This document shows, piece after piece, positions 37,175-58,473 of a stretch of 64,000 bases of DNA. Under the pieces are notes generated by a model, which saw only the letters and a program-made list of their open reading frames with translations, was not told the origin of the DNA and did not search any database. Within the stretch, counting starts at the first letter, position 1. Each line of letters opens with the position of its first letter. The stretch is taken from positions 1-64,000 of IMG/VR virus record IMGVR_UViG_3300044712_000810; one strand, written 5' to 3'. A program made the translations under genes and the position numbers.

Positions 37175-37221
37175 CACAAGAATGGGGGTGGAAACACCCC
37201 CATTTTTAATATTCTCTTTTT

Positions 37222-37359: not shown

Positions 37360-38982
37360 ATGAAGAAAGTCGTAAAATCAGTGGAAAAGGCAATTTACAA
37401 AAACCCAACAGCGACAGCAGACACTGTCAACAAACACGGCACAAAAGCTTGGACTCAGTCCGATAGCACTCGTGTCGATCAGATCATGATGACAGGTACA
37501 TTTGGAAACTCGTTCTACGCCTCCGGCGACGAACTTGTGAAAGATGCTATCGAAGTCATCGAACGCGTGGCAAAGAAAGATCCTGCGCTGCTTGCATCAA
37601 CCATCGTGAAGGGTCGTAATGACGGCTTCATCAGAACTGCACCGTTAATCGGTCTAACAGTTCTATCGATGCACGCTCCAGCTGAATTTCGTAAAATCTT
37701 CAACGATACCGTGAAAACCGGTAACGACCTTGAAGACTTCATGAAGTTCGCATCAACCATGCGTAAAGGATTCGGAACTGCAATCAAGAAAGCTATGTGG
37801 GGATGGCTGTTTGAAAAGGTAACACCTTTCTACGCAACCAAATACACAAAGCAAATCGCGAACGCAATTTCCGTTTCGCATCCAAGAACACTCGATCCTA
37901 TCTTCGATTACATCATGCAGCACACTGCTGGTAAATCGAGAAACTATGCGGCTGCTCTCAAAAAGTATCCTGCCCTTCGTGGTATGGAAGAAGCAAAGGT
38001 AGCAGTTCAAAACAAAGACTGGAAGAAAGCCCAGAAACTAATCGACGAGCACAGACTCGATCCGACTACTTTTCTTGGCATGGGAACAATGACAAAAGAT
38101 GTGTGGAAATCACTTTCTGCACAATTTGGTGTCATGGCATATCTCAAATACCTTAACAAGATCGTCCGCGAGGATGCTCTTGATCCTAAGGTAATGAGAG
38201 AAAAGCTAAAACCTGAAGTCCTGAACAAGGCAAAGGTTTTCCCATTCCGTCTTTACATCGCAAGAGAAAACATCCAGAACGCAACAGTTCGTGATCATCT
38301 CGCCCAAGTCCTCGACGACTACGGCAAGATTTACAACTGGGAATCTTGGGGTGACAAGCAATTTGTCATCGCACCAGACGTTTCTGGATCAATGGTTCAA
38401 GCTGTACGTGGATCTAAACTAACTCCAGCCACAGTTGCTGGTATGTTCAGTGGATTCCTGTACAAATTCATTCCAGGAAGTATTCTTCTTCCTTGGAGCA
38501 CTGAAGTTCGTCCGAACCTCGTGCGTCCTCGTCAGGACTCTGTTCTGACACATATCGAAAGTATTGCCCGTGCAAACGGCGGTGGAACAGCAATGGCTTC
38601 ACCGATCGATCACATGATCCGCAATAAGATCAAGTGTGACTACTTCATCGGAATCACCGATTCTGAAGAATGGTCTGCACCTGTGACCAGATATGCTTGG
38701 GGCGGACGTAGATCCGATGAAAGACAGTGGATTGATGCTTGGACTGAATACAGAAATAAAGTCAACAAGAATGCGAAAGCAATTCTTCTTCGTGTGGATG
38801 GATACCCAACACAGCCATTCGATGACAAAACAGCTAAAGAAAATGGAATTTACCAGATCTTCGGTTGGTCCGACAACGTACTCAAATACGTTGATTACGT
38901 GATCAATTCTGAAAAATATGTGGTAAAAGAAAAAGAAAAGAAAGTTGAAAAACTTGATAAATATGTAACTATCGAAAGATAG
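37360..38982 (+). CDS. Ro60/Rsr ortholog (TROVE + C-terminal vWA)
   Basis: TGTFGNSFYA, RNDGFIRTAP, FPFRLYIA, vWA MIDAS-like APDVSGSM, GGGTAMASP, ITDSEEW. Confidence 0.9.
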   Translation: MKKVVKSVEKAIYKNPTATADTVNKHGTKAWTQSDSTRVDQIMMTGTFGNSFYASGDELVKDAIEVIERVAKKDPALLASTIVKGRNDGFIRTAPLIGLTVLSMHAPAEFRKIFNDTVKTGNDLEDFMKFASTMRKGFGTAIKKAMWGWLFEKVTPFYATKYTKQIANAISVSHPRTLDPIFDYIMQHTAGKSRNYAAALKKYPALRGMEEAKVAVQNKDWKKAQKLIDEHRLDPTTFLGMGTMTKDVWKSLSAQFGVMAYLKYLNKIVREDALDPKVMREKLKPEVLNKAKVFPFRLYIARENIQNATVRDHLAQVLDDYGKIYNWESWGDKQFVIAPDVSGSMVQAVRGSKLTPATVAGMFSGFLYKFIPGSILLPWSTEVRPNLVRPRQDSVLTHIESIARANGGGTAMASPIDHMIRNKIKCDYFIGITDSEEWSAPVTRYAWGGRRSDERQWIDAWTEYRNKVNKNAKAILLRVDGYPTQPFDDKTAKENGIYQIFGWSDNVLKYVDYVINSEKYVVKEKEKKVEKLDKYVTIER

Positions 38983-39031
38983 TTTTCAGGTGGGAGTTAT
39001 TACACTCCCACCAACTACAAATTTCTAAATT

Positions 39032-39100
39032 TGCAAGGTATCAGTAATAAGTTTCAACGCACTGTTAAAGCCAAAAAGGCTTATTACATTAGTCCTTGCG
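39032..39100 (+). ncRNA. Scaffold RNA unit 1 (Asn GUU anticodon-loop cargo)
   Basis: GCAAGG/CCTTGC closing stem; GTAATAAGTTT/AGGCTTATTAC inner stem; CAAC-GC-A-CTGTTAA-A-GC. Confidence 0.8.
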
Positions 39101-39115
39101 CTTCTTTCAAATTTT

Positions 39116-39338
39116 GGAAGGTATCAGAAAAACGTTCAACGCACATGAAATGCACCCGAGTTAACACTCGTGTAGGTTCGAGTCCTACCCTTGGCACCAA
39201 TCATGGGGACCATCTAGAGAGAAAGTCGAAAGACCGCTTCAAAAGATAGCAATTAAATTTGCAGGTACCCTCCAAATTTTGCCGAGGTGGCGGAATTGGT
39301 AGACGCAGGTAAAAACAATGTTTTTCATCAGTCCTTCC
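39116..39338 (+). ncRNA. Scaffold RNA unit 2 enclosing a circularly permuted tRNA-Leu-like body
   Basis: GGAAGG/CCTTCC; 3' half 39154-39199 (variable arm, T arm, CCTTGGC-A-CCA) precedes 5' half 39281-39310 (GCCGAGGTGGCGGAATTGGTAGACGCA). Confidence 0.85.
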
Positions 39339-39347
39339 GACTTATTT

Positions 39348-39425
39348 TGTGGAGTAGAGTAGTCTGGTCTAACTCGTAGGTCTCATAAGCCTAGTACACA
39401 GGTTCAAATCCTGTCTCCGCAACCA
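39348..39425 (+). tRNA. tRNA-Met(CAT), initiator-like sequence
   Basis: TGTGGAG/CTCCGCA, D stem GAGT/ACTC, TAGGT-CTCATAA-GCCTA, ACAGG-TTCAAAT-CCTGT, ACCA end. Confidence 0.9.
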
Positions 39426-39429
39426 CTTT

Positions 39430-39523
39430 TGAAAGGTAATCCGACAAGATTCAACGTTACCATTATACGTCTATCGGGCAACTCGACGCCCGATCGAAAC
39501 CGTCTTGTCATCTAGTCCTTTCA
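39430..39523 (+). ncRNA. Scaffold RNA unit 3
   Basis: TGAAAGG/CCTTTCA; GACAAGAT/GTCTTGTC; TTCAACG; insert hairpin ATCGGGC/GCCCGAT. Confidence 0.8.
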
Positions 39524-39529
39524 CCCTTT

Positions 39530-39592
39530 TGCAAGGTAAATGAATCTGGATTCAACGGAAAACTGAAAACACCAGATTTAACAGTCCTTGCA
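39530..39592 (+). ncRNA. Scaffold RNA unit 4 (minimal; possible Phe GAA loop CTGAAAA)
   Basis: TGCAAGG/CCTTGCA; AATCTGG/CCAGATT; TTCAACG. Confidence 0.8.
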
Positions 39593-39612
39593 CTTAAAAT
39601 TTCTCACAACTT

Positions 39613-39757
39613 TTGAGAGGTAACCCCGAGTAGGTTCAACGCTATATGGAAGCCGGTGTCATCGGTTCGAATCCGATCTCCTCCATCACAAATCTTTTGG
39701 GGGAGTAGCTCAGTCTGGTAGAGCACGAAAAACAATCTGCTCAATTAGTCCTCTCAA
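39613..39757 (+). ncRNA. Scaffold RNA unit 5 enclosing a circularly permuted tRNA-Ala-like body
   Basis: TTGAGAGG/CCTCTCAA; T arm ATCGG-TTCGAAT-CCGAT and CTCCTCC-A (39661-39685) precede GGGGGAGTAGCTCAGTCTGGTAGAGCAC (from 39699); G3:U70. Confidence 0.85.
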
Positions 39758-39771
39758 CTTTTAAAAATTTT

Positions 39772-39846
39772 GGTCTAGTAGCTTAATGGTAGAGCACCTG
39801 CCTGTCGAGCAGCAAGATGTCGGTTCAAATCCGATCTAGATCGCCA
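39772..39846 (+). tRNA. tRNA-Asp(GTC), atypical anticodon arm
   Basis: GGTCTAG/CTAGATC, loop CTGTCGA, GTCGG-TTCAAAT-CCGAT, G73 and CCA. Confidence 0.85.
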
Positions 39847-39851
39847 TCTTT

Positions 39852-39970
39852 TGCAAGGTAACCCCGTGTGGTTTCAACGGAAACTAACAAGTCATCAAAA
39901 CTGGTTACAGTAGGATTCGAAGCCTACAACACCTTCGGGTGAAACGAGCCACACAAACCATGTCCTTGCA
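39852..39970 (+). ncRNA. Scaffold RNA unit 6 (T-arm-like and UUCG hairpins)
   Basis: TGCAAGG/CCTTGCA; GTGTGGTTT/GAGCCACAC; GTAGG-ATTCGAAG-CCTAC; CACC-TTCG-GGTG. Confidence 0.8.
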
Positions 39971-39981
39971 CTTAAAATTTT

Positions 39982-40067
39982 GGGGATGTTACACAAGCGG
40001 CAACGTGACCTGGCTGTAACCCAGGTGCCTTCGGGCTTCAGAGGTTCGAGTCCTCTCTTCCCCACCA
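39982..40067 (+). tRNA. tRNA-Tyr(GTA)
   Basis: GGGGATG/CTTCCCC, CCTGG-CTGTAAC-CCAGG, long variable arm, AGAGG-TTCGAGT-CCTCT, ACCA. Confidence 0.92.
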
Positions 40068-40085
40068 TTATAATTTGGAGATATT

Positions 40086-40481
40086 ATGTTTGATTTCAAT
40101 AAATGCGACAATCCAAAAAAGCAAGGTAATATTGGAATTGGTATCGCAATCGCATGGTTCGTAAAAAATGGTTGTACCGTATCTATTCCATTAACAGATT
40201 GTCAAGAATATGATCTTGTCATCGATGATATTAATGGAAAATTATACAAAGTTCAAGTTAAAACTACAACATTTAAAGAATTTAATACTTATAAAATTAA
40301 CTTAAAAACCTGTGGTGGCAATCAAAGTTTTAATACAATTAAAAAATTCGATAAAACGAAAGTAGATTTATTATTCATTGTTACCTGTGAAGGTGATATG
40401 TATTTAATTCCAACAAATAAAATAACACAAACAAATTGTTTAAAACTTGGTGAAAAATATCAAGACTGTAAAGTTACTTAA
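40086..40481 (+). CDS. Free-standing PD-(D/E)XK endonuclease (I-Ssp6803I/PDDEXK_5-like)
   Basis: KQGNIG...VSIPL.D...YDLVID...LYKVQVKT...KVDLLFI. Confidence 0.8.
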   Translation: MFDFNKCDNPKKQGNIGIGIAIAWFVKNGCTVSIPLTDCQEYDLVIDDINGKLYKVQVKTTTFKEFNTYKINLKTCGGNQSFNTIKKFDKTKVDLLFIVTCEGDMYLIPTNKITQTNCLKLGEKYQDCKVT

Positions 40482-40494
40482 AATTTCCACTTAT

Positions 40495-40577
40495 TTGAAG
40501 GGTAAACCGACAAGTTTCAACGCTCATAACGTATTCGCGCCATCTTGCGAATCTAACTTGTCACGCAGTCCCTTCAA
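40495..40577 (+). ncRNA. Scaffold RNA unit 7 (Met CAU anticodon-loop cargo)
   Basis: TTGAAGGG/CCCTTCAA; GACAAGTT/AACTTGTC; CAAC-G-CTCATAA-C. Confidence 0.8.
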
Positions 40578-40583
40578 CTTTTT

Positions 40584-40654
40584 TGTGAGGTATCAGTAAT
40601 AAGTTTCAACGCCCCTTGCACGAGCCTAAAACGCTTATTACACAAGTCCTCACA
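40584..40654 (+). ncRNA. Scaffold RNA unit 8 (Ala UGC anticodon-loop cargo)
   Basis: TGTGAGG/CCTCACA; same inner stem as unit 1; GCCC-CTTGCAC-GAGC. Confidence 0.8.
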
Positions 40655-40671
40655 TTTAAATTTCCAAATTT

Positions 40672-40805
40672 TGGAAGGTATCAAGAAACATCCAACGTTA
40701 ACTCCAAACCGGGGGTTATGGTTCAAGTCCATACATTTTGCCAAATAAGGCAGTGTAATGTAATGTAGCATACCGGTTCAACGCAGTTTCTTAAAAGTCC
40801 TTCCA
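40672..40805 (+). ncRNA. Scaffold RNA unit 9 enclosing a permuted tRNA-Trp-like body
   Basis: TGGAAGG/CCTTCCA; CTCCAAA-CCGG, T arm TATGG-TTCAAGT-CCATA, closed acceptor hairpin, then D arm ATGT/GCAT and CCGGT. Confidence 0.75.
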
Positions 40806-40812
40806 CATTTTT

Positions 40813-40880
40813 TGCGAGGTATTCTTCCAGGATTCAACGATCCTCTAAATCGAAAACGACCCTGGATATCAGTCCTCGCG
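40813..40880 (+). ncRNA. Scaffold RNA unit 10 (CGAT-CCTCTAA-ATCG stem-loop, Arg UCU-like)
   Basis: TGCGAGG/CCTCGCG; TCCAGG/CCTGGA; TTCAACG. Confidence 0.8.
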
Positions 40881-40900: not shown

Positions 40901-41077
40901 ATGTGTAAAGATGAATGCACTTGCGAAGTCAAGTGTCCAATCTGTCAAGAATTGATAGATAAACATGGTGGATTATATCCAAACCAAGAAACAATCAAAG
41001 CCATCGAAGAAGTTCGAAACGGCAAAACAAAAACATTTAATTCAGTTGAAGAGTTATTTAACGAATTACACAAATAA
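40901..41077 (+). CDS. 58-aa protein: Cys-rich N-terminus plus DinJ/RelB-type C-terminal toxin-binding segment (not in ORF track)
   Basis: AAGGAG RBS; hand translation MCKDECTCEVKCPICQELIDKHGGLYPNQETIKAIEEVRNGKTKTFNSVEELFNELHK; followed by terminator CGGGTC-TTCG-GACCC. Confidence 0.75.
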   Translation: MCKDECTCEVKCPICQELIDKHGGLYPNQETIKAIEEVRNGKTKTFNSVEELFNELHK

Positions 41078-41114
41078 CCGGGTCTTCGGACCCAATTTTT
41101 ATTTTTACCTAAAG

Positions 41115-42511: not shown

Positions 42512-42525
42512 ACTTGGAGTCAACC

Positions 42526-43629
42526 ATGTCGTGTCTGGATAAATGCGCATTTCTTATTCCATATACTCAAATAGAGGCAGGTGCACAAACACAATTGTGC
42601 AACTATTTAAAAGAACCATTTTGCCTCCGCGCAGCTGTAATGCCAGACATCCATACCGGATATGCGTTACCAGTTGGTGCGGTTGTATTGCTCGAAGGAG
42701 TAATATCACCAGCAGCAGTTGGTGTTGATATAGGTTGCGGAATGTGTTGTATTCGTACAGATGTTCCGATCAAACATATCAAAGGAAAAGAAGAAAAACT
42801 ATTTAAACAAATATATTCTACTATTCCAGTTGGATTTGGTAGTCATGCAAAAAAAAGAGACTATCCTGATTTCAAATCAGCAATACTGGATAAAAAACTG
42901 GATGCAGCAATAAATTTAAAATTAAAAGAACAACTTGGAACTCTCGGTGGTGGGAATCACTTTATTGAAATTGGTGAAACACGAGAAGGAAATATAGGAA
43001 TTACTATTCATAGTGGATCACGTAATGCTGGAAAGCAAATATGTGATCATTACTGTGCATTAGCTAAAAAAATTCATACTGAATTAAAAGGTGACTTTCT
43101 ATTCTTCGATCGTGATGAAGGAAAGGCATACTTTCAAGATATGAACTTTATGTTATCATATGCATTAGAAAATCGTTTAAATATGATGGTTGACATTCTT
43201 GATATACTTGGGTTGGATCAAAATCTACTCAAGGAAATCATTAATGAGAATCATAATCATGCCGAAGATCTAGATGGAAAGATTCTGCATCGTAAAGGTG
43301 CAACACCAGCAGCAAAAGACCAATTGGGTGTTATCCCAGGTAATATGCGCGACGGTGTATATATAACTAAAGGTCTTGGCAACGACAAATATCTGTCAAG
43401 TGCAAGTCATGGAGCCGGTCGTAAAGGTTCTAGAACTTGGGCAAAACAAAAAGATACAGTCGAAACATTTGCAAAACTAATGAATGGTATTGTCGCGAAA
43501 GTTGACAAACATACATTGGATGAAGCACCTTGGGCATATAAAAAGATCGAGGATGTAATTAAAGCACAAGAAGGAATTGTGGTTGATATTATCGATCACA
43601 TTAGACCAATCATTAACATCAAAGGATAG
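42526..43629 (+). CDS. rtcB: RtcB 2',3'-cyclic-phosphate/5'-OH RNA ligase
   Basis: MPDIHTG, VGVDIGCG, LGTLGGGNHFIE, IHSGSR, NENHNH, HRKGATP, SASHGAGR, DEAPWAYK. Confidence 0.95.
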   Translation: MSCLDKCAFLIPYTQIEAGAQTQLCNYLKEPFCLRAAVMPDIHTGYALPVGAVVLLEGVISPAAVGVDIGCGMCCIRTDVPIKHIKGKEEKLFKQIYSTIPVGFGSHAKKRDYPDFKSAILDKKLDAAINLKLKEQLGTLGGGNHFIEIGETREGNIGITIHSGSRNAGKQICDHYCALAKKIHTELKGDFLFFDRDEGKAYFQDMNFMLSYALENRLNMMVDILDILGLDQNLLKEIINENHNHAEDLDGKILHRKGATPAAKDQLGVIPGNMRDGVYITKGLGNDKYLSSASHGAGRKGSRTWAKQKDTVETFAKLMNGIVAKVDKHTLDEAPWAYKKIEDVIKAQEGIVVDIIDHIRPIINIKG

Positions 43630-56472: not shown

Positions 56473-58473
56473 TTAGTGGACGATGATAAATACGTTAATG
56501 CGTTCGATGGCTCTGATTGGTGTAATGTCAATGTATACGTTTAATTCAGAACGAACATCATCGAACTTAACGTTTGTTGTAAATGATTTAAGTACAGAAT
56601 ATCTTTCAAGAGCAGGGTTTTCAAGGAATGCTGCAAGGAAGTTATCAACACGGAATTTAGCTTGATTGATCCAGTATTGTGTTGCCTTTCTTTGTAAGAT
56701 ATCTTTAAGTAATGTTGGAATTACTTTACGAATATAAGCAACGAATTTAGCAACGTGAGCACGTTTCAGAATAGACAGACGTTTCCATGTTGTAAGTTGT
56801 GTAAGGAAGTATTTACCTTGTGGTTCAACGATTGTGAAGTTAAGTTCACGATCTTGTAAATCACCACGTTCTGTATGGTTCGCACGATATGCGAGTTCAA
56901 TTGGCTCTTGAATTGCACCTTTTTCGATACCTGCAACTGGTTCAGCAATAAAGTATGCGCCGTCACAATATAAGTGTCTTTCAATAGCATGATAGATAGG
57001 AGTCATGTAAATGTATTCACCAGTGTAAATATCGAAAATCTTTCTATATTGAACATATAACATAGATGTCCAAACGTTCCAATCGTACTCATTTAAACGA
57101 GCATCAAGGTCTTGTTTGTATTTCTTGTGCATTGGATAAATGTCACCAAGATGAATACAATCTTGACGATAGTCAGCTAATGCTCTAGCTGAATTTTGTA
57201 CTGCTGGTGGGAAACCACCGGATACAATATAGTCTGGTTCATACCATGGGTATACGGCTTCACCAAGCTGTTCGATAGAACCGTCAATACTTGTACCATC
57301 AGAATATGGACCAACACCTTGATATGCTTGTGCAACAAGTTTAAATACAGTATCACTTGGAGCATATGTACCAGAACCTGACATATAAAGTCCAGTACCA
57401 TCGGTACCATTTTCAAGTTGTACTCCACCTTTAGCAACGTTGTTTGTTCCTAATGGAGAAACTGTACTAAGGGCAAGCATAACTTGTAAACGACGATCTT
57501 CGGCATCTGTACTTGTAATAAGTTCATCAGCCGCAGCAGCGGACTTACAACGCATAAGTTCTGATTCTTCATTAATAACATCTTCGATATAAAGAATACG
57601 TCCAGAACTAATGTCACGAATGACTTCGTTCTTTGGTGTTCTACGAATTAATGATACTTCCCATGGACCTTCAACTAATGATTCAGTTCCATCATCATTG
57701 ATTTGGGAAACCCAAATATCCATGAAACAGTACTTATAAAGGACTTCACCTTTGTCATCTGTAAACATTCTTTCAAGTTGAGTGTTACGAACACCCTTAA
57801 CTTTAAGTCTGTTATAATATGCACCAGCACCATTTGCATAGAAATAGTAAACAACGTTTTGTTCAATTTCTGGCAAATCTTGATCTGGTTGATCGATATG
57901 TAATCCCCATGGTAATGCTTGATAAGGAACTACTTTGTTAATTGGTGAAGTTGTTGATGGATTAGTATATTTACGATCAAGAGTAAGTATATAACCTGAA
58001 GTATCATCCTTTGAAACTACTTGGACTGCTTCTGCCATACTTACAGTTGGTGGGTAAATCCAATCACCAATGTCAACTGCACTATAACCGTTAAAAGTTT
58101 GACAATTCACGGTGTTACTATTTTGTGTGAAAATGAAATCTTCTGTAACTGTTTGGAAGTTTGTATTCTTTTGAATTGCGGTATTAGCTAAATAAGAGTC
58201 TTCTGGAGTAATACGAATAGCAAGAACTTTTCCAGTATATTCTAACGCTTTGTCCAAACAATAATGTGAAGGACTTGTACGTCTATAGTTTGGTTTACCA
58301 AACAGTTTTTGGAATTGTGCTCTTGAATTTACTTGAACGACTCTATTATGTGGACCTCTATCGCAAAGAATAACACCAAAAACAGTACGACCGATTTCTA
58401 AAGTAGGAGCAACATAAGAAGCATCTTCAATAGTAACATATACTGCCGGTTCTCTTCTATCTGTTACTGGCAT
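56473..58473 (-). CDS. Contractile tail sheath protein
   Basis: EPAVYVTIED N-terminus, FQKLFGKP, APVAGIEKG-like segment, ELNFTIVE, IDITPIRAIERINVFI C-terminus. Confidence 0.85.
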   Translation of the reverse strand: MPVTDRREPAVYVTIEDASYVAPTLEIGRTVFGVILCDRGPHNRVVQVNSRAQFQKLFGKPNYRRTSPSHYCLDKALEYTGKVLAIRITPEDSYLANTAIQKNTNFQTVTEDFIFTQNSNTVNCQTFNGYSAVDIGDWIYPPTVSMAEAVQVVSKDDTSGYILTLDRKYTNPSTTSPINKVVPYQALPWGLHIDQPDQDLPEIEQNVVYYFYANGAGAYYNRLKVKGVRNTQLERMFTDDKGEVLYKYCFMDIWVSQINDDGTESLVEGPWEVSLIRRTPKNEVIRDISSGRILYIEDVINEESELMRCKSAAAADELITSTDAEDRRLQVMLALSTVSPLGTNNVAKGGVQLENGTDGTGLYMSGSGTYAPSDTVFKLVAQAYQGVGPYSDGTSIDGSIEQLGEAVYPWYEPDYIVSGGFPPAVQNSARALADYRQDCIHLGDIYPMHKKYKQDLDARLNEYDWNVWTSMLYVQYRKIFDIYTGEYIYMTPIYHAIERHLYCDGAYFIAEPVAGIEKGAIQEPIELAYRANHTERGDLQDRELNFTIVEPQGKYFLTQLTTWKRLSILKRAHVAKFVAYIRKVIPTLLKDILQRKATQYWINQAKFRVDNFLAAFLENPALERYSVLKSFTTNVKFDDVRSELNVYIDITPIRAIERINVFIIVH

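What the first reader, a model, noticed from the sequence alone, without database searches (positions are those of the whole stretch)
39116..39338. Circularly permuted tRNA-Leu body with intact A73-CCA inside scaffold unit 2
Seen: the 3' half (ACC, variable arm CGAGT-TAAC-ACTCG, T arm, CCTTGGC-A-CCA; 39154-39199) lies upstream of the 5' half (GCCGAGGTGGCGGAATTGGTAGACGCA-GGT; 39281-39310). The acceptor strands pair 7/7. The anticodon stem is cut to GGT/ACC and replaced by the scaffold, and an 81-nt linker joins CCA to position 1. Known: YrlA RNAs are permuted tRNA mimics with a closed acceptor stem, bacterial LeuRS largely ignores the anticodon, and permuted tmRNA genes mature into two-piece RNAs. 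Inference: RNase P and 3' trimming could give a two-piece, leucylatable Ro-bound tRNA mimic.
Basis: partly seen in the sequence, partly recalled or inferred. Interest (0 to 1): 0.85.

Follow-up and report, generated by a model that had tools for sequence, protein, structure and literature searches.

The report
Phage Y RNA with tRNA-Leu body
This is a phage-encoded Y RNA, the small RNA partner of the Ro60/Rsr protein. Its tRNA-like part is a leucine-tRNA body that carries its own CCA end and a removable 81-base spacer, which makes it a good natural candidate for testing whether a Y RNA can be opened and charged like a real tRNA.

Summary
At 39154-39199 lie ACC, a 5-bp variable arm, a T arm, the acceptor 3' strand and A73-CCA. 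An 81-nt linker follows. At 39281-39310 lie the acceptor 5' strand, a tRNA-Leu D arm and GGT.

The unit sits 134 nt downstream of a Ro60/Rsr gene. It is unit 2 of ten covarying scaffold units interleaved with three real tRNAs, in a 315-kb phage contig. The 3'-half-before-5'-half order is the normal architecture of YrlA-class Y RNAs. A covariance model built mainly from units of related contigs hits unit 2 (30 bits, E 4.5e-7) with a 79-nt insertion in the acceptor loop.

The two-piece idea has a published precedent: M. smegmatis YrlA is cut by RNase P and gains CCA. An encoded NCCA after a 7-bp acceptor stem proved common near rsr: 13 of 61 phage or metagenome modules and 33 of 79 bacterial ones. 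Some bacterial ones carry inserts of 22-94 nt.

What is unusual here is the class-II tRNA-Leu body with the E. coli-type LeuRS identity set, plus a linker that ends in the same leader as the neighbouring tRNAs. Opening by RNase P is likely (about 0.55). Leucylation is plausible but untested (about 0.2). This is a new variant of a known kind.

The parts
37360..38982 (+). Ro60/Rsr ortholog gene (540 aa), immediately upstream of the array
   Evidence: Pfam vWA_Ro60 3.2e-13 and TROVE 1.6e-6. 177 homologues, the nearest 48% identical.
39033..40879 (+). Array of ten Y-RNA-like scaffold units (U1-U10) interleaved with tRNA-Met, tRNA-Asp, tRNA-Tyr and one PD-(D/E)XK gene
   Evidence: All ten units have a 6/6 basal stem with compensatory changes at positions 2-4. 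All ten carry an AGGTA motif followed by a TTCAACG motif, with two single-base variants: GGGTA in U7 and TCCAACG in U9. All are hit by model R1. tRNAs.
39116..39121 (+). Unit 2 basal stem, 5' strand (GGAAGG); presumed Rsr-binding module together with the GGTA motif
   Evidence: Pairs 6/6 with 39333-39338.
39128..39133 (+). Unit 2 second stem, 5' strand (AAAAAC)
   Evidence: Pairs with GTTTTT at 39320-39325. The equivalent stem covaries in relatives.
39135..39141 (+). TTCAACG motif, invariant in this clade's units
   Evidence: Invariant columns in alignments A2 and A3.
39154..39156 (+). ACC, the 3' strand of the 3-bp remnant of the anticodon stem (positions 41-43)
   Evidence: Pairs with GGT at 39308-39310. 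The same ACC/GGT junction is present in the relative L003a.
39157..39170 (+). Long variable arm, 5-bp stem with a TAAC loop (class II tRNA feature)
   Evidence: The relative L042a also has a variable-arm hairpin.
39172..39188 (+). T arm (GTAGG-TTCGAGT-CCTAC)
   Evidence: An 18-base stretch that includes the whole T arm is identical to the L015:8898 unit.
39189..39195 (+). Acceptor stem, 3' strand (positions 66-72)
   Evidence: 7/7 pairing with 39281-39287.
39196..39199 (+). Encoded discriminator A73 and CCA; predicted mature 3' end of the upstream piece at 39199
   Evidence: NCCA is enriched at this place in related modules.
39200..39280 (+). 81-nt linker: trailer-like start, weakly structured middle, and a 3' end AAATTTT identical to the leaders of tRNA-Asp and tRNA-Tyr and of units in the array; predicted to be removed
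   Evidence: No homologue. No Rfam family at E up to 10. No promoter. Fold z -1.5. Modelled as a 79-nt insertion by R1.
39281..39287 (+). Acceptor stem, 5' strand (positions 1-7); predicted RNase P site between 39280 (U-1) and 39281 (G+1)
   Evidence: The cleavage itself is inferred from the M. smegmatis precedent.
39288..39307 (+). U8 G9, tRNA-Leu-type D arm (3-bp stem, 11-nt loop with G18G19) and A26
   Evidence: 25 of 28 bases identical to E. coli tRNA-Leu genes. The 21-mer spanning the last two acceptor bases, U8-G9 and the whole D arm lies in normal-order tRNAs in IMG/VR; where ARAGORN calls them, 33 of 39 are tRNA-Leu.
39308..39310 (+). GGT, the 5' strand of the anticodon-stem remnant (positions 27-29)
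39311..39319 (+). A-rich joint (AAAAACAAT) between the tRNA-like module and the scaffold, shared with U5 and relatives
   Evidence: Alignment A2. R1 alignment.
39320..39325 (+). Unit 2 second stem, 3' strand (GTTTTT)
39330..39338 (+). AGTCC motif and basal stem 3' strand (CCTTCC, 39333-39338); end of unit 2
39615..39755 (+). Unit 5, the sister YrlA-like unit: 7-bp acceptor stem, A73-UCA, 14-nt loop, class I D arm
   Evidence: Rfam YrlA 36.2 bits, E 8.7e-6, below the gathering score of 69. Scanner result.
42514..43629 (+). RtcB RNA ligase gene, the usual operon partner of rsr and Y RNAs in bacteria
   Evidence: Pfam RtcB 3.4e-80.

Best explanation
Unit 2 (39116-39338) is a YrlA-class Y RNA gene in the rsr operon of a jumbo phage.

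Anatomy. Its two ends pair into the clade's conserved scaffold, which is the presumed Rsr-binding module. Its effector module is a tRNA body in the order variable arm, T arm, acceptor, D arm, which is the standard order for YrlA. Three things are unusual:
1. The body is a class-II tRNA-Leu.
2. The acceptor 3' strand is followed by an encoded A73-CCA.
3. The acceptor loop is an 81-nt spacer that begins like a tRNA trailer and ends in the same AAATTTT leader as the real tRNAs of the array.

Most likely course (inferred):
- The operon transcript is cut up by the host tRNA-processing enzymes.
- RNase P cuts between 39280 and 39281.
- The spacer is trimmed back to CCA at 39199.
- The result is a two-piece RNA of about 84 and 58 nt, held together by the acceptor, D-T and scaffold helices, and bound by the phage Rsr.
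- It would expose a free tRNA-Leu-like acceptor end, as M. smegmatis YrlA does.

Whether that end is charged by LeuRS is open.

What is shown: the sequence anatomy, membership of the clade, the genomic context and the recurrence of NCCA. What is inferred: Rsr binding, the cleavage, the trimming and the charging.
For: - Context: the unit lies 134 nt downstream of rsr on the same strand, and RtcB is nearby.
- Scaffold: all ten units have covarying basal stems.
- Collinearity: unit 2 aligns with YrlA-like units of other rsr contigs. The closest, L003a, shares both junctions. Unit 2 differs only by its variable arm and the acceptor-loop insertion.
- Structure of relatives: RNAalifold on the relatives gives a T arm, a 7-bp acceptor stem and a D arm, with compensatory changes in 16 of 21 pairs.
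- Model hit: R1 matches unit 2 at 30.1 bits, E 4.5e-7.
- Precedent for opening: M. smegmatis YrlA has a 7-bp acceptor stem, is cleaved by RNase P in vivo and in vitro, and gains CCA, giving Rsr-bound pieces of 82 and 65 nt (PMC4201824; bioRxiv 10.1101/312249).
- Substrate features in unit 2: 7-bp stem, U at -1, A73 and an encoded CCA.
- Shared punctuation: all three neighbouring tRNAs also encode CCA, and tRNA-Asp and tRNA-Tyr share the AAATTTT leader.
- NCCA follows 7-bp acceptor stems in 13 of 61 phage or metagenome modules (P about 1e-11) and in 33 of 79 bacterial modules. Counting distinct acceptor strands in the bacterial set gives 15 of 55 (P about 5e-15).
- Canonical bacterial YrlAs carry GCCA followed by structured inserts of 22-94 nt.
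- Leucine identity: the 5' half is 25 of 28 identical to E. coli tRNA-Leu. A73, A15:U48, G18G19, A20a, U8:A14, the T-loop U54, U55, C56 and A58, and C2-G71 are all present. These match the published E. coli identity set, for which the anticodon arm and the variable arm are dispensable (PMC9976931).
Against: - There is no expression or end-mapping data.
- No close relative exists (nearest Rsr 48% identical), so conservation of the linker and of the CCA cannot be tested.
- Related Leu-like units close the acceptor stem with short loops, one with a GCAA tetraloop (L042a) and others with ACTAAATAA or ACTCAT and no CCA. An open end is therefore not required for the subfamily.
- The published view is that most YrlAs stay closed.
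- Unit 2 gets no hit from Rfam YrlA, and the clade lacks the GNCGAAN0-1G motif.
- The 3' half has no E. coli match.
- The host, and therefore its LeuRS and RNase P type, is unknown.
Confidence: 0.6

Rival explanations
1. Unit 2 is a one-piece YrlA. The 81-nt linker is an expansion segment of a closed acceptor stem-loop, for example an extra protein-binding module. The RNA is never opened, and the CCA is only a leftover of its tRNA ancestry.
For: - S. Typhimurium YrlA and D. radiodurans Yrn1 are not cleaved, and most YrlAs are thought to stay closed.
- Acceptor-loop length varies widely in the family, from 4 to 98 nt.
- Some long forms are plain helix extensions, such as L010:6449.
- The linker is predicted to fold.
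Against: - In unit 2 the linker does not extend the acceptor helix. About 8 unpaired bases flank it on each side, like a trailer and a leader.
- The linker fold is no better than that of shuffled sequence (z -1.5).
- The 7-bp stem, U-1 and ACCA are the known RNase P determinants. The one YrlA with a 7-bp stem that has been tested is cleaved.
- The enrichment of NCCA across the family argues for selection rather than a leftover.
Confidence: 0.3
2. Unit 2 is an evolutionary accident. It would be a Y-scaffold unit that recombined with, or was converted by, a tandem pair of phage tRNA-Leu genes, capturing their intergenic spacer. It would have no function of its own.
For: - The arrangement T arm, acceptor 3' strand, ACCA, spacer, acceptor 5' strand, D arm is exactly what the junction of two tandem tRNA-Leu genes looks like. 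Such tandems were picked up by the same scanner (L049, L102).
- The linker ends in the array's usual leader.
- The linker has no homologue.
Against: - Every helix is intact: 6/6, 6/6, 3/3, 5/5, 5/5, 7/7 and 3/3.
- All invariant tRNA and scaffold positions are kept.
- The junctions on both sides of the tRNA body are shared with a unit on a contig whose Rsr is only 47% identical (L003a). The body was therefore not recently pasted in.
Confidence: 0.07
3. It is a true circularly permuted tRNA-Leu gene, as in Cyanidioschyzon. Its ends would be cut and ligated, for example by the nearby RtcB, to give a translating tRNA.
For: - Permuted order, encoded CCA and an RtcB gene 3 kb downstream.
- The YrlA literature raises this possibility in general terms.
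Against: - There is no anticodon loop anywhere in the unit, only a 3-bp stem remnant.
- The place of the anticodon arm is taken by a scaffold shared with nine units, most of which have no tRNA body.
- No bulge-helix-bulge motif is evident in the sequence as read (no dedicated search was run). No splicing endonuclease gene was looked for, and none has been reported in bacteria.
- ARAGORN and the Rfam tRNA model give no call.
Confidence: 0.02

Closest known systems
Mycobacterium smegmatis YrlA (Chen et al. 2014, PMC4201824)
   Same: - Rsr-linked Y RNA with a permuted tRNA-like module.
- 7-bp acceptor stem.
- Shown to be cut by RNase P and to end in CCA, giving two Rsr-bound pieces of 82 and 65 nt. 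The pieces predicted here are about 84 and 58 nt.
   Different: - In M. smegmatis only part of the CCA is encoded and the CA is added afterwards, and no long acceptor-loop insert is described for it. Here the full ACCA is encoded and an 81-nt spacer must be removed.
- The body here is class II, of tRNA-Leu type.
- The gene is phage-borne and is one of ten units.
- The Rsr-binding motif differs.
Salmonella Typhimurium YrlA (Rfam RF02553; structure in Wang et al. 2018, bioRxiv 10.1101/312249)
   Same: - Same module order (variable arm, T arm, acceptor, D arm).
- Same genomic logic, with rsr, Y RNAs and rtcB together.
- tRNA tertiary positions are kept.
   Different: - The Salmonella acceptor stem is 6 bp, closed, and not cleaved.
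- It has the GNCGAAN0-1G motif, which this clade replaces with AGGUA and UUCAACG motifs.
- Unit 2 does not score against RF02553.
Bacterial YrlA-like RNAs with an encoded GCCA and a long insert (for example a Rhizobiales bacterium, L225:5647, and Rhodomicrobium, L240:5290; found here)
   Same: A 7-bp acceptor stem, then NCCA, then a structured insert of 22-94 nt, then an AU-rich leader, then the acceptor 5' strand.
   Different: - They have the canonical YrlA Rsr-binding motif and a class I D arm.
- Their discriminator is G73.
- They are chromosomal and are single or double copies, not a ten-unit array.
Two-piece (circularly permuted) tmRNA
   Same: The gene order is permuted, and processing gives two base-paired pieces with a chargeable CCA end.
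   Different: - Unit 2 has no tag reading frame and no pseudoknots.
- Nothing links it to SmpB, although no smpB gene was looked for.
- Rfam tmRNA_permuted does not hit unit 2.
- tmRNA carries alanine identity, not leucine.
Permuted tRNA genes of Cyanidioschyzon merolae and some archaea
   Same: The 3' half lies upstream of the 5' half, and the linker between CCA and position 1 is removed by RNase P and a 3' processing enzyme.
   Different: Those genes carry a full anticodon arm and are circularised at a bulge-helix-bulge motif to give translating tRNAs. Unit 2 has no anticodon loop.

Membership tests
YrlA-class Y RNA (Chen et al. 2014; Rfam RF02553) | Encoded within about 4 kb of a Ro60/Rsr (TROVE) gene, on the same strand | tested here: met
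   rsr is at 37360-38982 (+) and unit 2 at 39116-39338 (+).
YrlA-class Y RNA (Chen et al. 2014; Rfam RF02553) | tRNA-like module in the order V, T arm, acceptor stem(-loop), D arm, with tRNA-invariant nucleotides | tested here: met
   Model R1 gives 30.1 bits, E 4.5e-7, across T arm, acceptor and D arm.
YrlA-class Y RNA (Chen et al. 2014; Rfam RF02553) | The 5' and 3' ends pair into a long stem that carries the Ro60-binding site | tested here: met
   Two stems of 6 bp each, covarying across the ten units and across relatives. Binding itself was not tested.
YrlA-class Y RNA (Chen et al. 2014; Rfam RF02553) | GNCGAAN0-1G motif near the 5' end | tested here: not met
   This clade has AGGUA and UUCAACG motifs instead. 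The canonical motif is seen in more distant loci.
YrlA-class Y RNA (Chen et al. 2014; Rfam RF02553) | Reaches the Rfam gathering score (69 bits) | tested here: not met
   Unit 2 gets no hit at E up to 10. Sister unit 5 reaches 36.2 bits.
YrlA-class Y RNA (Chen et al. 2014; Rfam RF02553) | Bound by Rsr in vivo | not testable with these tools
   Needs immunoprecipitation.
RNase P-opened YrlA (M. smegmatis type) | Seven-base-pair acceptor stem stacked on the T arm | tested here: met
   7/7 pairing including one G-U pair.
RNase P-opened YrlA (M. smegmatis type) | Cleavage at +1 and a CCA 3' end in vivo | not testable with these tools
   Only the determinants can be read: U-1, A73 and the encoded CCA.
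Functional tRNA-Leu | Anticodon arm with a leucine anticodon; collinear gene | tested here: not met
   No anticodon loop, and the order is permuted. ARAGORN and Rfam tRNA make no call.
Functional tRNA-Leu | E. coli-type LeuRS identity set: A73, A15:U48, G18G19, A20a and the D/T-loop tertiary pairs | tested here: met
   Read at 39196, 39295 with 39171, 39298-39299, 39301 and the T loop. The identity set is taken from PMC9976931. The D arm matches tRNA-Leu genes.
Permuted tRNA gene (Cyanidioschyzon type) | Complete anticodon arm formed after circularisation at a bulge-helix-bulge motif | tested here: not met
   Only a 3-bp stem remnant leads into a shared Y scaffold. This rests on reading the sequence. 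No dedicated bulge-helix-bulge search was run.
Two-piece tmRNA | Tag reading frame, pseudoknots, and a match to the tmRNA models | tested here: not met
   ARAGORN finds no tmRNA. The only Rfam tmRNA match in unit 2 is a 6-bit T-loop match.

The most novel reading that the evidence does not exclude
After RNase P opening, the Rsr-bound two-piece RNA is leucylated by the host LeuRS. A phage Y RNA would then carry an aminoacyl end and act through it. It could engage EF-Tu, the ribosome or the Leu/Phe-tRNA protein transferase, or it could serve as a decoy or sponge for host defence toxins that attack tRNA acceptor ends. This would be the first aminoacylated Y RNA.
Probability: 0.15. Interest if true: 0.85.

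Novelty: new variant of a known kind. Interest (0 to 1): 0.5.

Why it matters
Since 2014 it has been an open question whether any Y RNA is aminoacylated and what the tRNA-like module of YrlA does. Unit 2 is the cleanest natural test case I could find. It has a full LeuRS identity set, an encoded ACCA and a pre-tRNA-like leader and trailer. It also sits in a compact phage operon that could be expressed in a laboratory strain.

The survey made along the way also bears on the field. An encoded NCCA after a 7-bp acceptor stem was found in about a fifth of the 7-bp phage or metagenome modules and about two fifths of the 7-bp bacterial ones. RNase P opening of YrlA RNAs may therefore be much more common than the current view that most stay closed.

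Finally, a ten-unit Y RNA array mixed with tRNAs, Rsr and RtcB in a jumbo phage points to phage manipulation of host RNA quality control or tRNA-damage responses.

Tried and rejected
- Close relatives: only the window's own contig was found in IMG/VR. The nearest Rsr is 48% identical, so conservation of the linker cannot be tested.
- Junction-specific DNA pattern in IMG/VR: 57 hits. All were chance matches in coding DNA except the window's own contig and the L015 contig.
- D-arm 21-mer in IMG/VR: 110 or more loci. These are normal-order or tandem tRNA genes, called tRNA-Leu in 33 of 39 ARAGORN calls. None was another permuted-only module. One apparent case, L290, is cut off by the end of the locus.
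- Linker: no similarity to anything fetched. No Rfam family, ribozymes included, at E up to 10. No promoter-like site. Its fold is not better than that of shuffled sequence.
- 3' half against E. coli genomes: no match.
- Reading the region as coding: the only ORF (39031-39249, TTG start, 72 aa) runs across two RNA units, so I dismissed it.
- Tandem tRNA genes gave false positives in my scanner. I removed them by dropping any module whose T arm or D arm lies inside an ARAGORN-called tRNA.

Full report
**1. Observation**

| Element | Coordinates |
|---|---|
| ACC | 39154-39156 |
| Variable arm, 5-bp stem with TAAC loop | 39157-39170 |
| U48 | 39171 |
| T arm GTAGG-TTCGAGT-CCTAC | 39172-39188 |
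| Acceptor 3' strand CCTTGGC | 39189-39195 |
| A73 | 39196 |
| CCA | 39197-39199 |
| Linker (81 nt) | 39200-39280 |
| Acceptor 5' strand GCCGAGG | 39281-39287 |
| U8 G9 | 39288-39289 |
| D arm (3-bp stem, 11-nt loop) | 39290-39306 |
| A26 | 39307 |
| GGT | 39308-39310 |

The acceptor pairs 7/7, with one G-U pair. Two outer helices close the unit: GGAAGG with CCTTCC at 39116-21 and 39333-38, and AAAAAC with GTTTTT at 39128-33 and 39320-25. The minimum-free-energy fold of 39112-39340 contains all of these helices (-63.7 kcal/mol, z -2.4). ARAGORN and the Rfam tRNA model do not call it, as expected for a permuted body without an anticodon arm.

**2. Context**

The window is part of IMG/VR contig UViG_3300044712_000810, 314,837 bp, a jumbo-phage-sized contig.

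- The ORF at 37360-38982 is a Ro60/Rsr ortholog, with Pfam vWA_Ro60 and TROVE hits.
- RtcB lies at 42514-43629.
- Terminator-like hairpins at 37178-37207 and 41080-41093 bracket rsr and everything up to a small RelB-like ORF.
- Between 39033 and 40879 there are ten units with the same scaffold: a basal 6-bp stem, a GGUA motif, a second stem, a UUCAACG motif, a variable insert, the second stem's return strand, AGUCC, and the basal stem's return strand.
- All ten basal stems pair 6/6, and positions 2-4 change in a compensatory way: C-G, G-C, A-U, U-A.
- Real tRNA-Met, tRNA-Asp and tRNA-Tyr genes, all with an encoded CCA, and one PD-(D/E)XK gene are interleaved.
- Most genes of the array are preceded by a U-rich spacer. 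The 5' half of unit 2 has the same AAATTTT leader as tRNA-Asp and tRNA-Tyr.

**3. What it is**

The order variable arm, T arm, acceptor, D arm, closed by a stem made from the RNA's two ends, next to rsr on the same strand, is the definition of YrlA-class Y RNAs (PMC4201824). The structural paper itself describes them as circularly permuted tRNAs (bioRxiv 10.1101/312249).

- Sister unit 5 (39615-39755) matches Rfam YrlA at 36 bits, E 8.7e-6, below the gathering score.
- Contigs that encode Rsr proteins 36-48% identical to this one carry the same kind of array with the same UUCAACG and AGUCC scaffold: L003, L006, L010, L033, L037, L042.
- Unit 2 aligns with these units end to end. L003a shares both junctions around the tRNA body: UUCAACG-N2-AUGAAA...ACC on one side and GGUAAAAA on the other.
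- The only differences are the long variable arm, which L042a also has, and about 72-79 extra bases in the acceptor loop.
- RNAalifold on nine units, without unit 2, predicts the T arm, a 7-bp acceptor stem, the D arm and the second scaffold stem. Compensatory changes occur in 16 of 21 pairs.
- The covariance model built from that alignment hits unit 2 at 30.1 bits, E 4.5e-7, with a 79-nt insertion in the acceptor loop. It also hits every other unit of the array.

Two formal YrlA criteria fail. The GNCGAAN0-1G motif is replaced in this clade, and RF02553 does not score unit 2. I therefore file it as a divergent phage clade of the YrlA kind, not as an RF02553 member.

**4. Leucine identity**

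- The 5' half matches annotated tRNA-Leu genes in all 5,426 complete E. coli genomes at 25 of 28 bases.
- Its D-arm 21-mer occurs in at least 110 IMG/VR loci, in normal-order tRNA genes. Where ARAGORN calls a gene there, it is tRNA-Leu in 33 of 39 cases.
- By reading, unit 2 has A73, A15:U48, G18G19, A20a, U8:A14, the T-loop U54, U55, C56 and A58, and C2-G71.
- This is the published E. coli set. Minimal tRNA-Leu molecules without the anticodon arm and the variable arm are still charged (PMC9976931).
- The 3' half has no E. coli match, which is unsurprising because variable arms diverge.

**5. How unusual are the CCA and the linker?**

I wrote a scanner that looks for a T arm, then seven bases, then a loop, then a 7/7 complement, then a D arm. 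It drops anything that lies inside an ARAGORN-called tRNA.

| Set of rsr loci | Modules | With NCCA after the acceptor stem | P against chance |
|---|---|---|---|
| 112 phage and metagenome loci | 61 distinct | 13 | about 1e-11 |
| 80 bacterial genome loci | 79 | 33 | about 2e-38 |
| Same bacterial loci, distinct acceptor strands | 55 | 15 | about 5e-15 |

In the phage and metagenome set the median loop is 7 nt. Unit 2 is the longest at 85, counting A73 and CCA; the next longest is 38.

Canonical bacterial YrlAs also exist with GCCA followed by structured inserts: 94 nt in a Rhizobiales bacterium, 44 nt in Rhodomicrobium and 22 nt in a Hyphomicrobiaceae genome.

The combination of encoded NCCA and a long insert is therefore a recurrent YrlA subclass, although I did not find it described in the papers I read. 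Leu-like (class II) D arms also recur, for example at L003:264, L015:8898, L042:44 and L186:3166. In those units the acceptor stem is closed by 4-9-nt loops.

**6. Mechanism**

M. smegmatis YrlA is the one tested YrlA with a 7-bp acceptor stem. It is cut by RNase P in vivo and in vitro and ends in CCA, giving Rsr-bound pieces of 82 and 65 nt. The 6-bp Salmonella RNA is not cut.

Unit 2 has the same determinants in stronger form: a 7-bp stem, U-1, A73 and an encoded CCA. Its linker leaves about 8 unpaired bases on each side of the acceptor stem instead of extending the helix. RNase P must act on this transcript anyway, to release the three tRNAs.

I therefore think opening at 39280/39281 and trimming to 39199 is more likely than not, about 0.55. 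This would give pieces of about 84 and 58 nt. Rsr binding is inferred from position and scaffold only. Leucylation is possible, about 0.2, but nothing here tests it.

**7. Rivals**

- A closed one-piece YrlA with an expansion segment (0.3).
- A functionless chimera made from tandem tRNA-Leu genes (0.07).
- A true permuted tRNA-Leu gene (0.02). This is nearly excluded because there is no anticodon loop.
- Chance. This is excluded.

**8. Verdict**

The permuted order and the two-piece outcome are already known for YrlA RNAs. What is new is the tRNA-Leu class II body with a full ACCA and an 81-nt spacer flanked like a pre-tRNA, inside a ten-unit phage array. I rate it a new variant of a known kind, of moderate interest, mainly as a test case for aminoacylation of a Y RNA.

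Noticed in passing
window 39033-40879: Ten Y-RNA-like scaffold units follow the rsr gene of a jumbo phage. They form two blocks split by a PD-(D/E)XK endonuclease gene (40086-40481) and are interleaved with tRNA-Met, tRNA-Asp and tRNA-Tyr. Bacterial rsr loci described in the papers I read have one to a few Y RNAs. U1 and U8 are near-duplicates, and U2 and U9 share their first 15 bases.
   Followed up: partly
window 39615-39755 (unit 5): A second YrlA-like unit with a 7-bp acceptor stem, A73 followed by UCA, a 14-nt loop and U at -1. By the M. smegmatis precedent it too could be an RNase P substrate. It is the only unit with a sub-threshold Rfam YrlA hit.
   Followed up: partly
window 39853-39969 (unit 6) and 40673-40804 (unit 9): These are reduced tRNA-like modules. 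Unit 6 keeps a T-like arm with an 8-nt loop and a UUCG-capped hairpin but has no D arm. Unit 9 keeps a good T arm, a 5-bp closed acceptor stem and a poor D arm, and it carries a second TTCAACG copy at 40777.
   Followed up: no
rsr loci from bacterial genomes, L170-L249 (for example L225:5647, L240:5290, L226:5650, L223:3632): An encoded NCCA directly after a 7-bp acceptor stem occurs in 33 of 79 YrlA-like modules, sometimes followed by structured inserts of 22-94 nt. This suggests that RNase P opening of YrlA RNAs is commoner than the literature assumes.
   Followed up: partly
L006:8438-9296: A scaffold unit of the unit 2 type (UUCAACG-UCUAUGAAA junction) appears to be interrupted by about 700 bp that carry a reverse-strand gene with a faint zf-FCS hit. 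The 5' strand of the unit's T stem is missing.
   Followed up: no
IMG/VR loci L250-L359 (for example L255, L285, L297): Many phage tRNA-Leu-like genes with acceptor strand AGTCAGG have 70-110 nt between the D arm and the T arm, and ARAGORN's default tRNA search, run without its intron option, does not call them. They may carry inserts or introns.
   Followed up: no
window 40901-41077: A small ORF (58 aa) at the end of the array has a weak RelB-antitoxin Pfam hit (E 3e-4, just below the cut-off). A clean intrinsic terminator follows at 41080-41093.
   Followed up: no
window 57729-57824 (-): ARAGORN calls a 96-nt tRNA-Thr(CGT) here. Rfam finds nothing, and I did not check whether the stretch lies inside an ORF. 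It is probably a false positive.
   Followed up: partly
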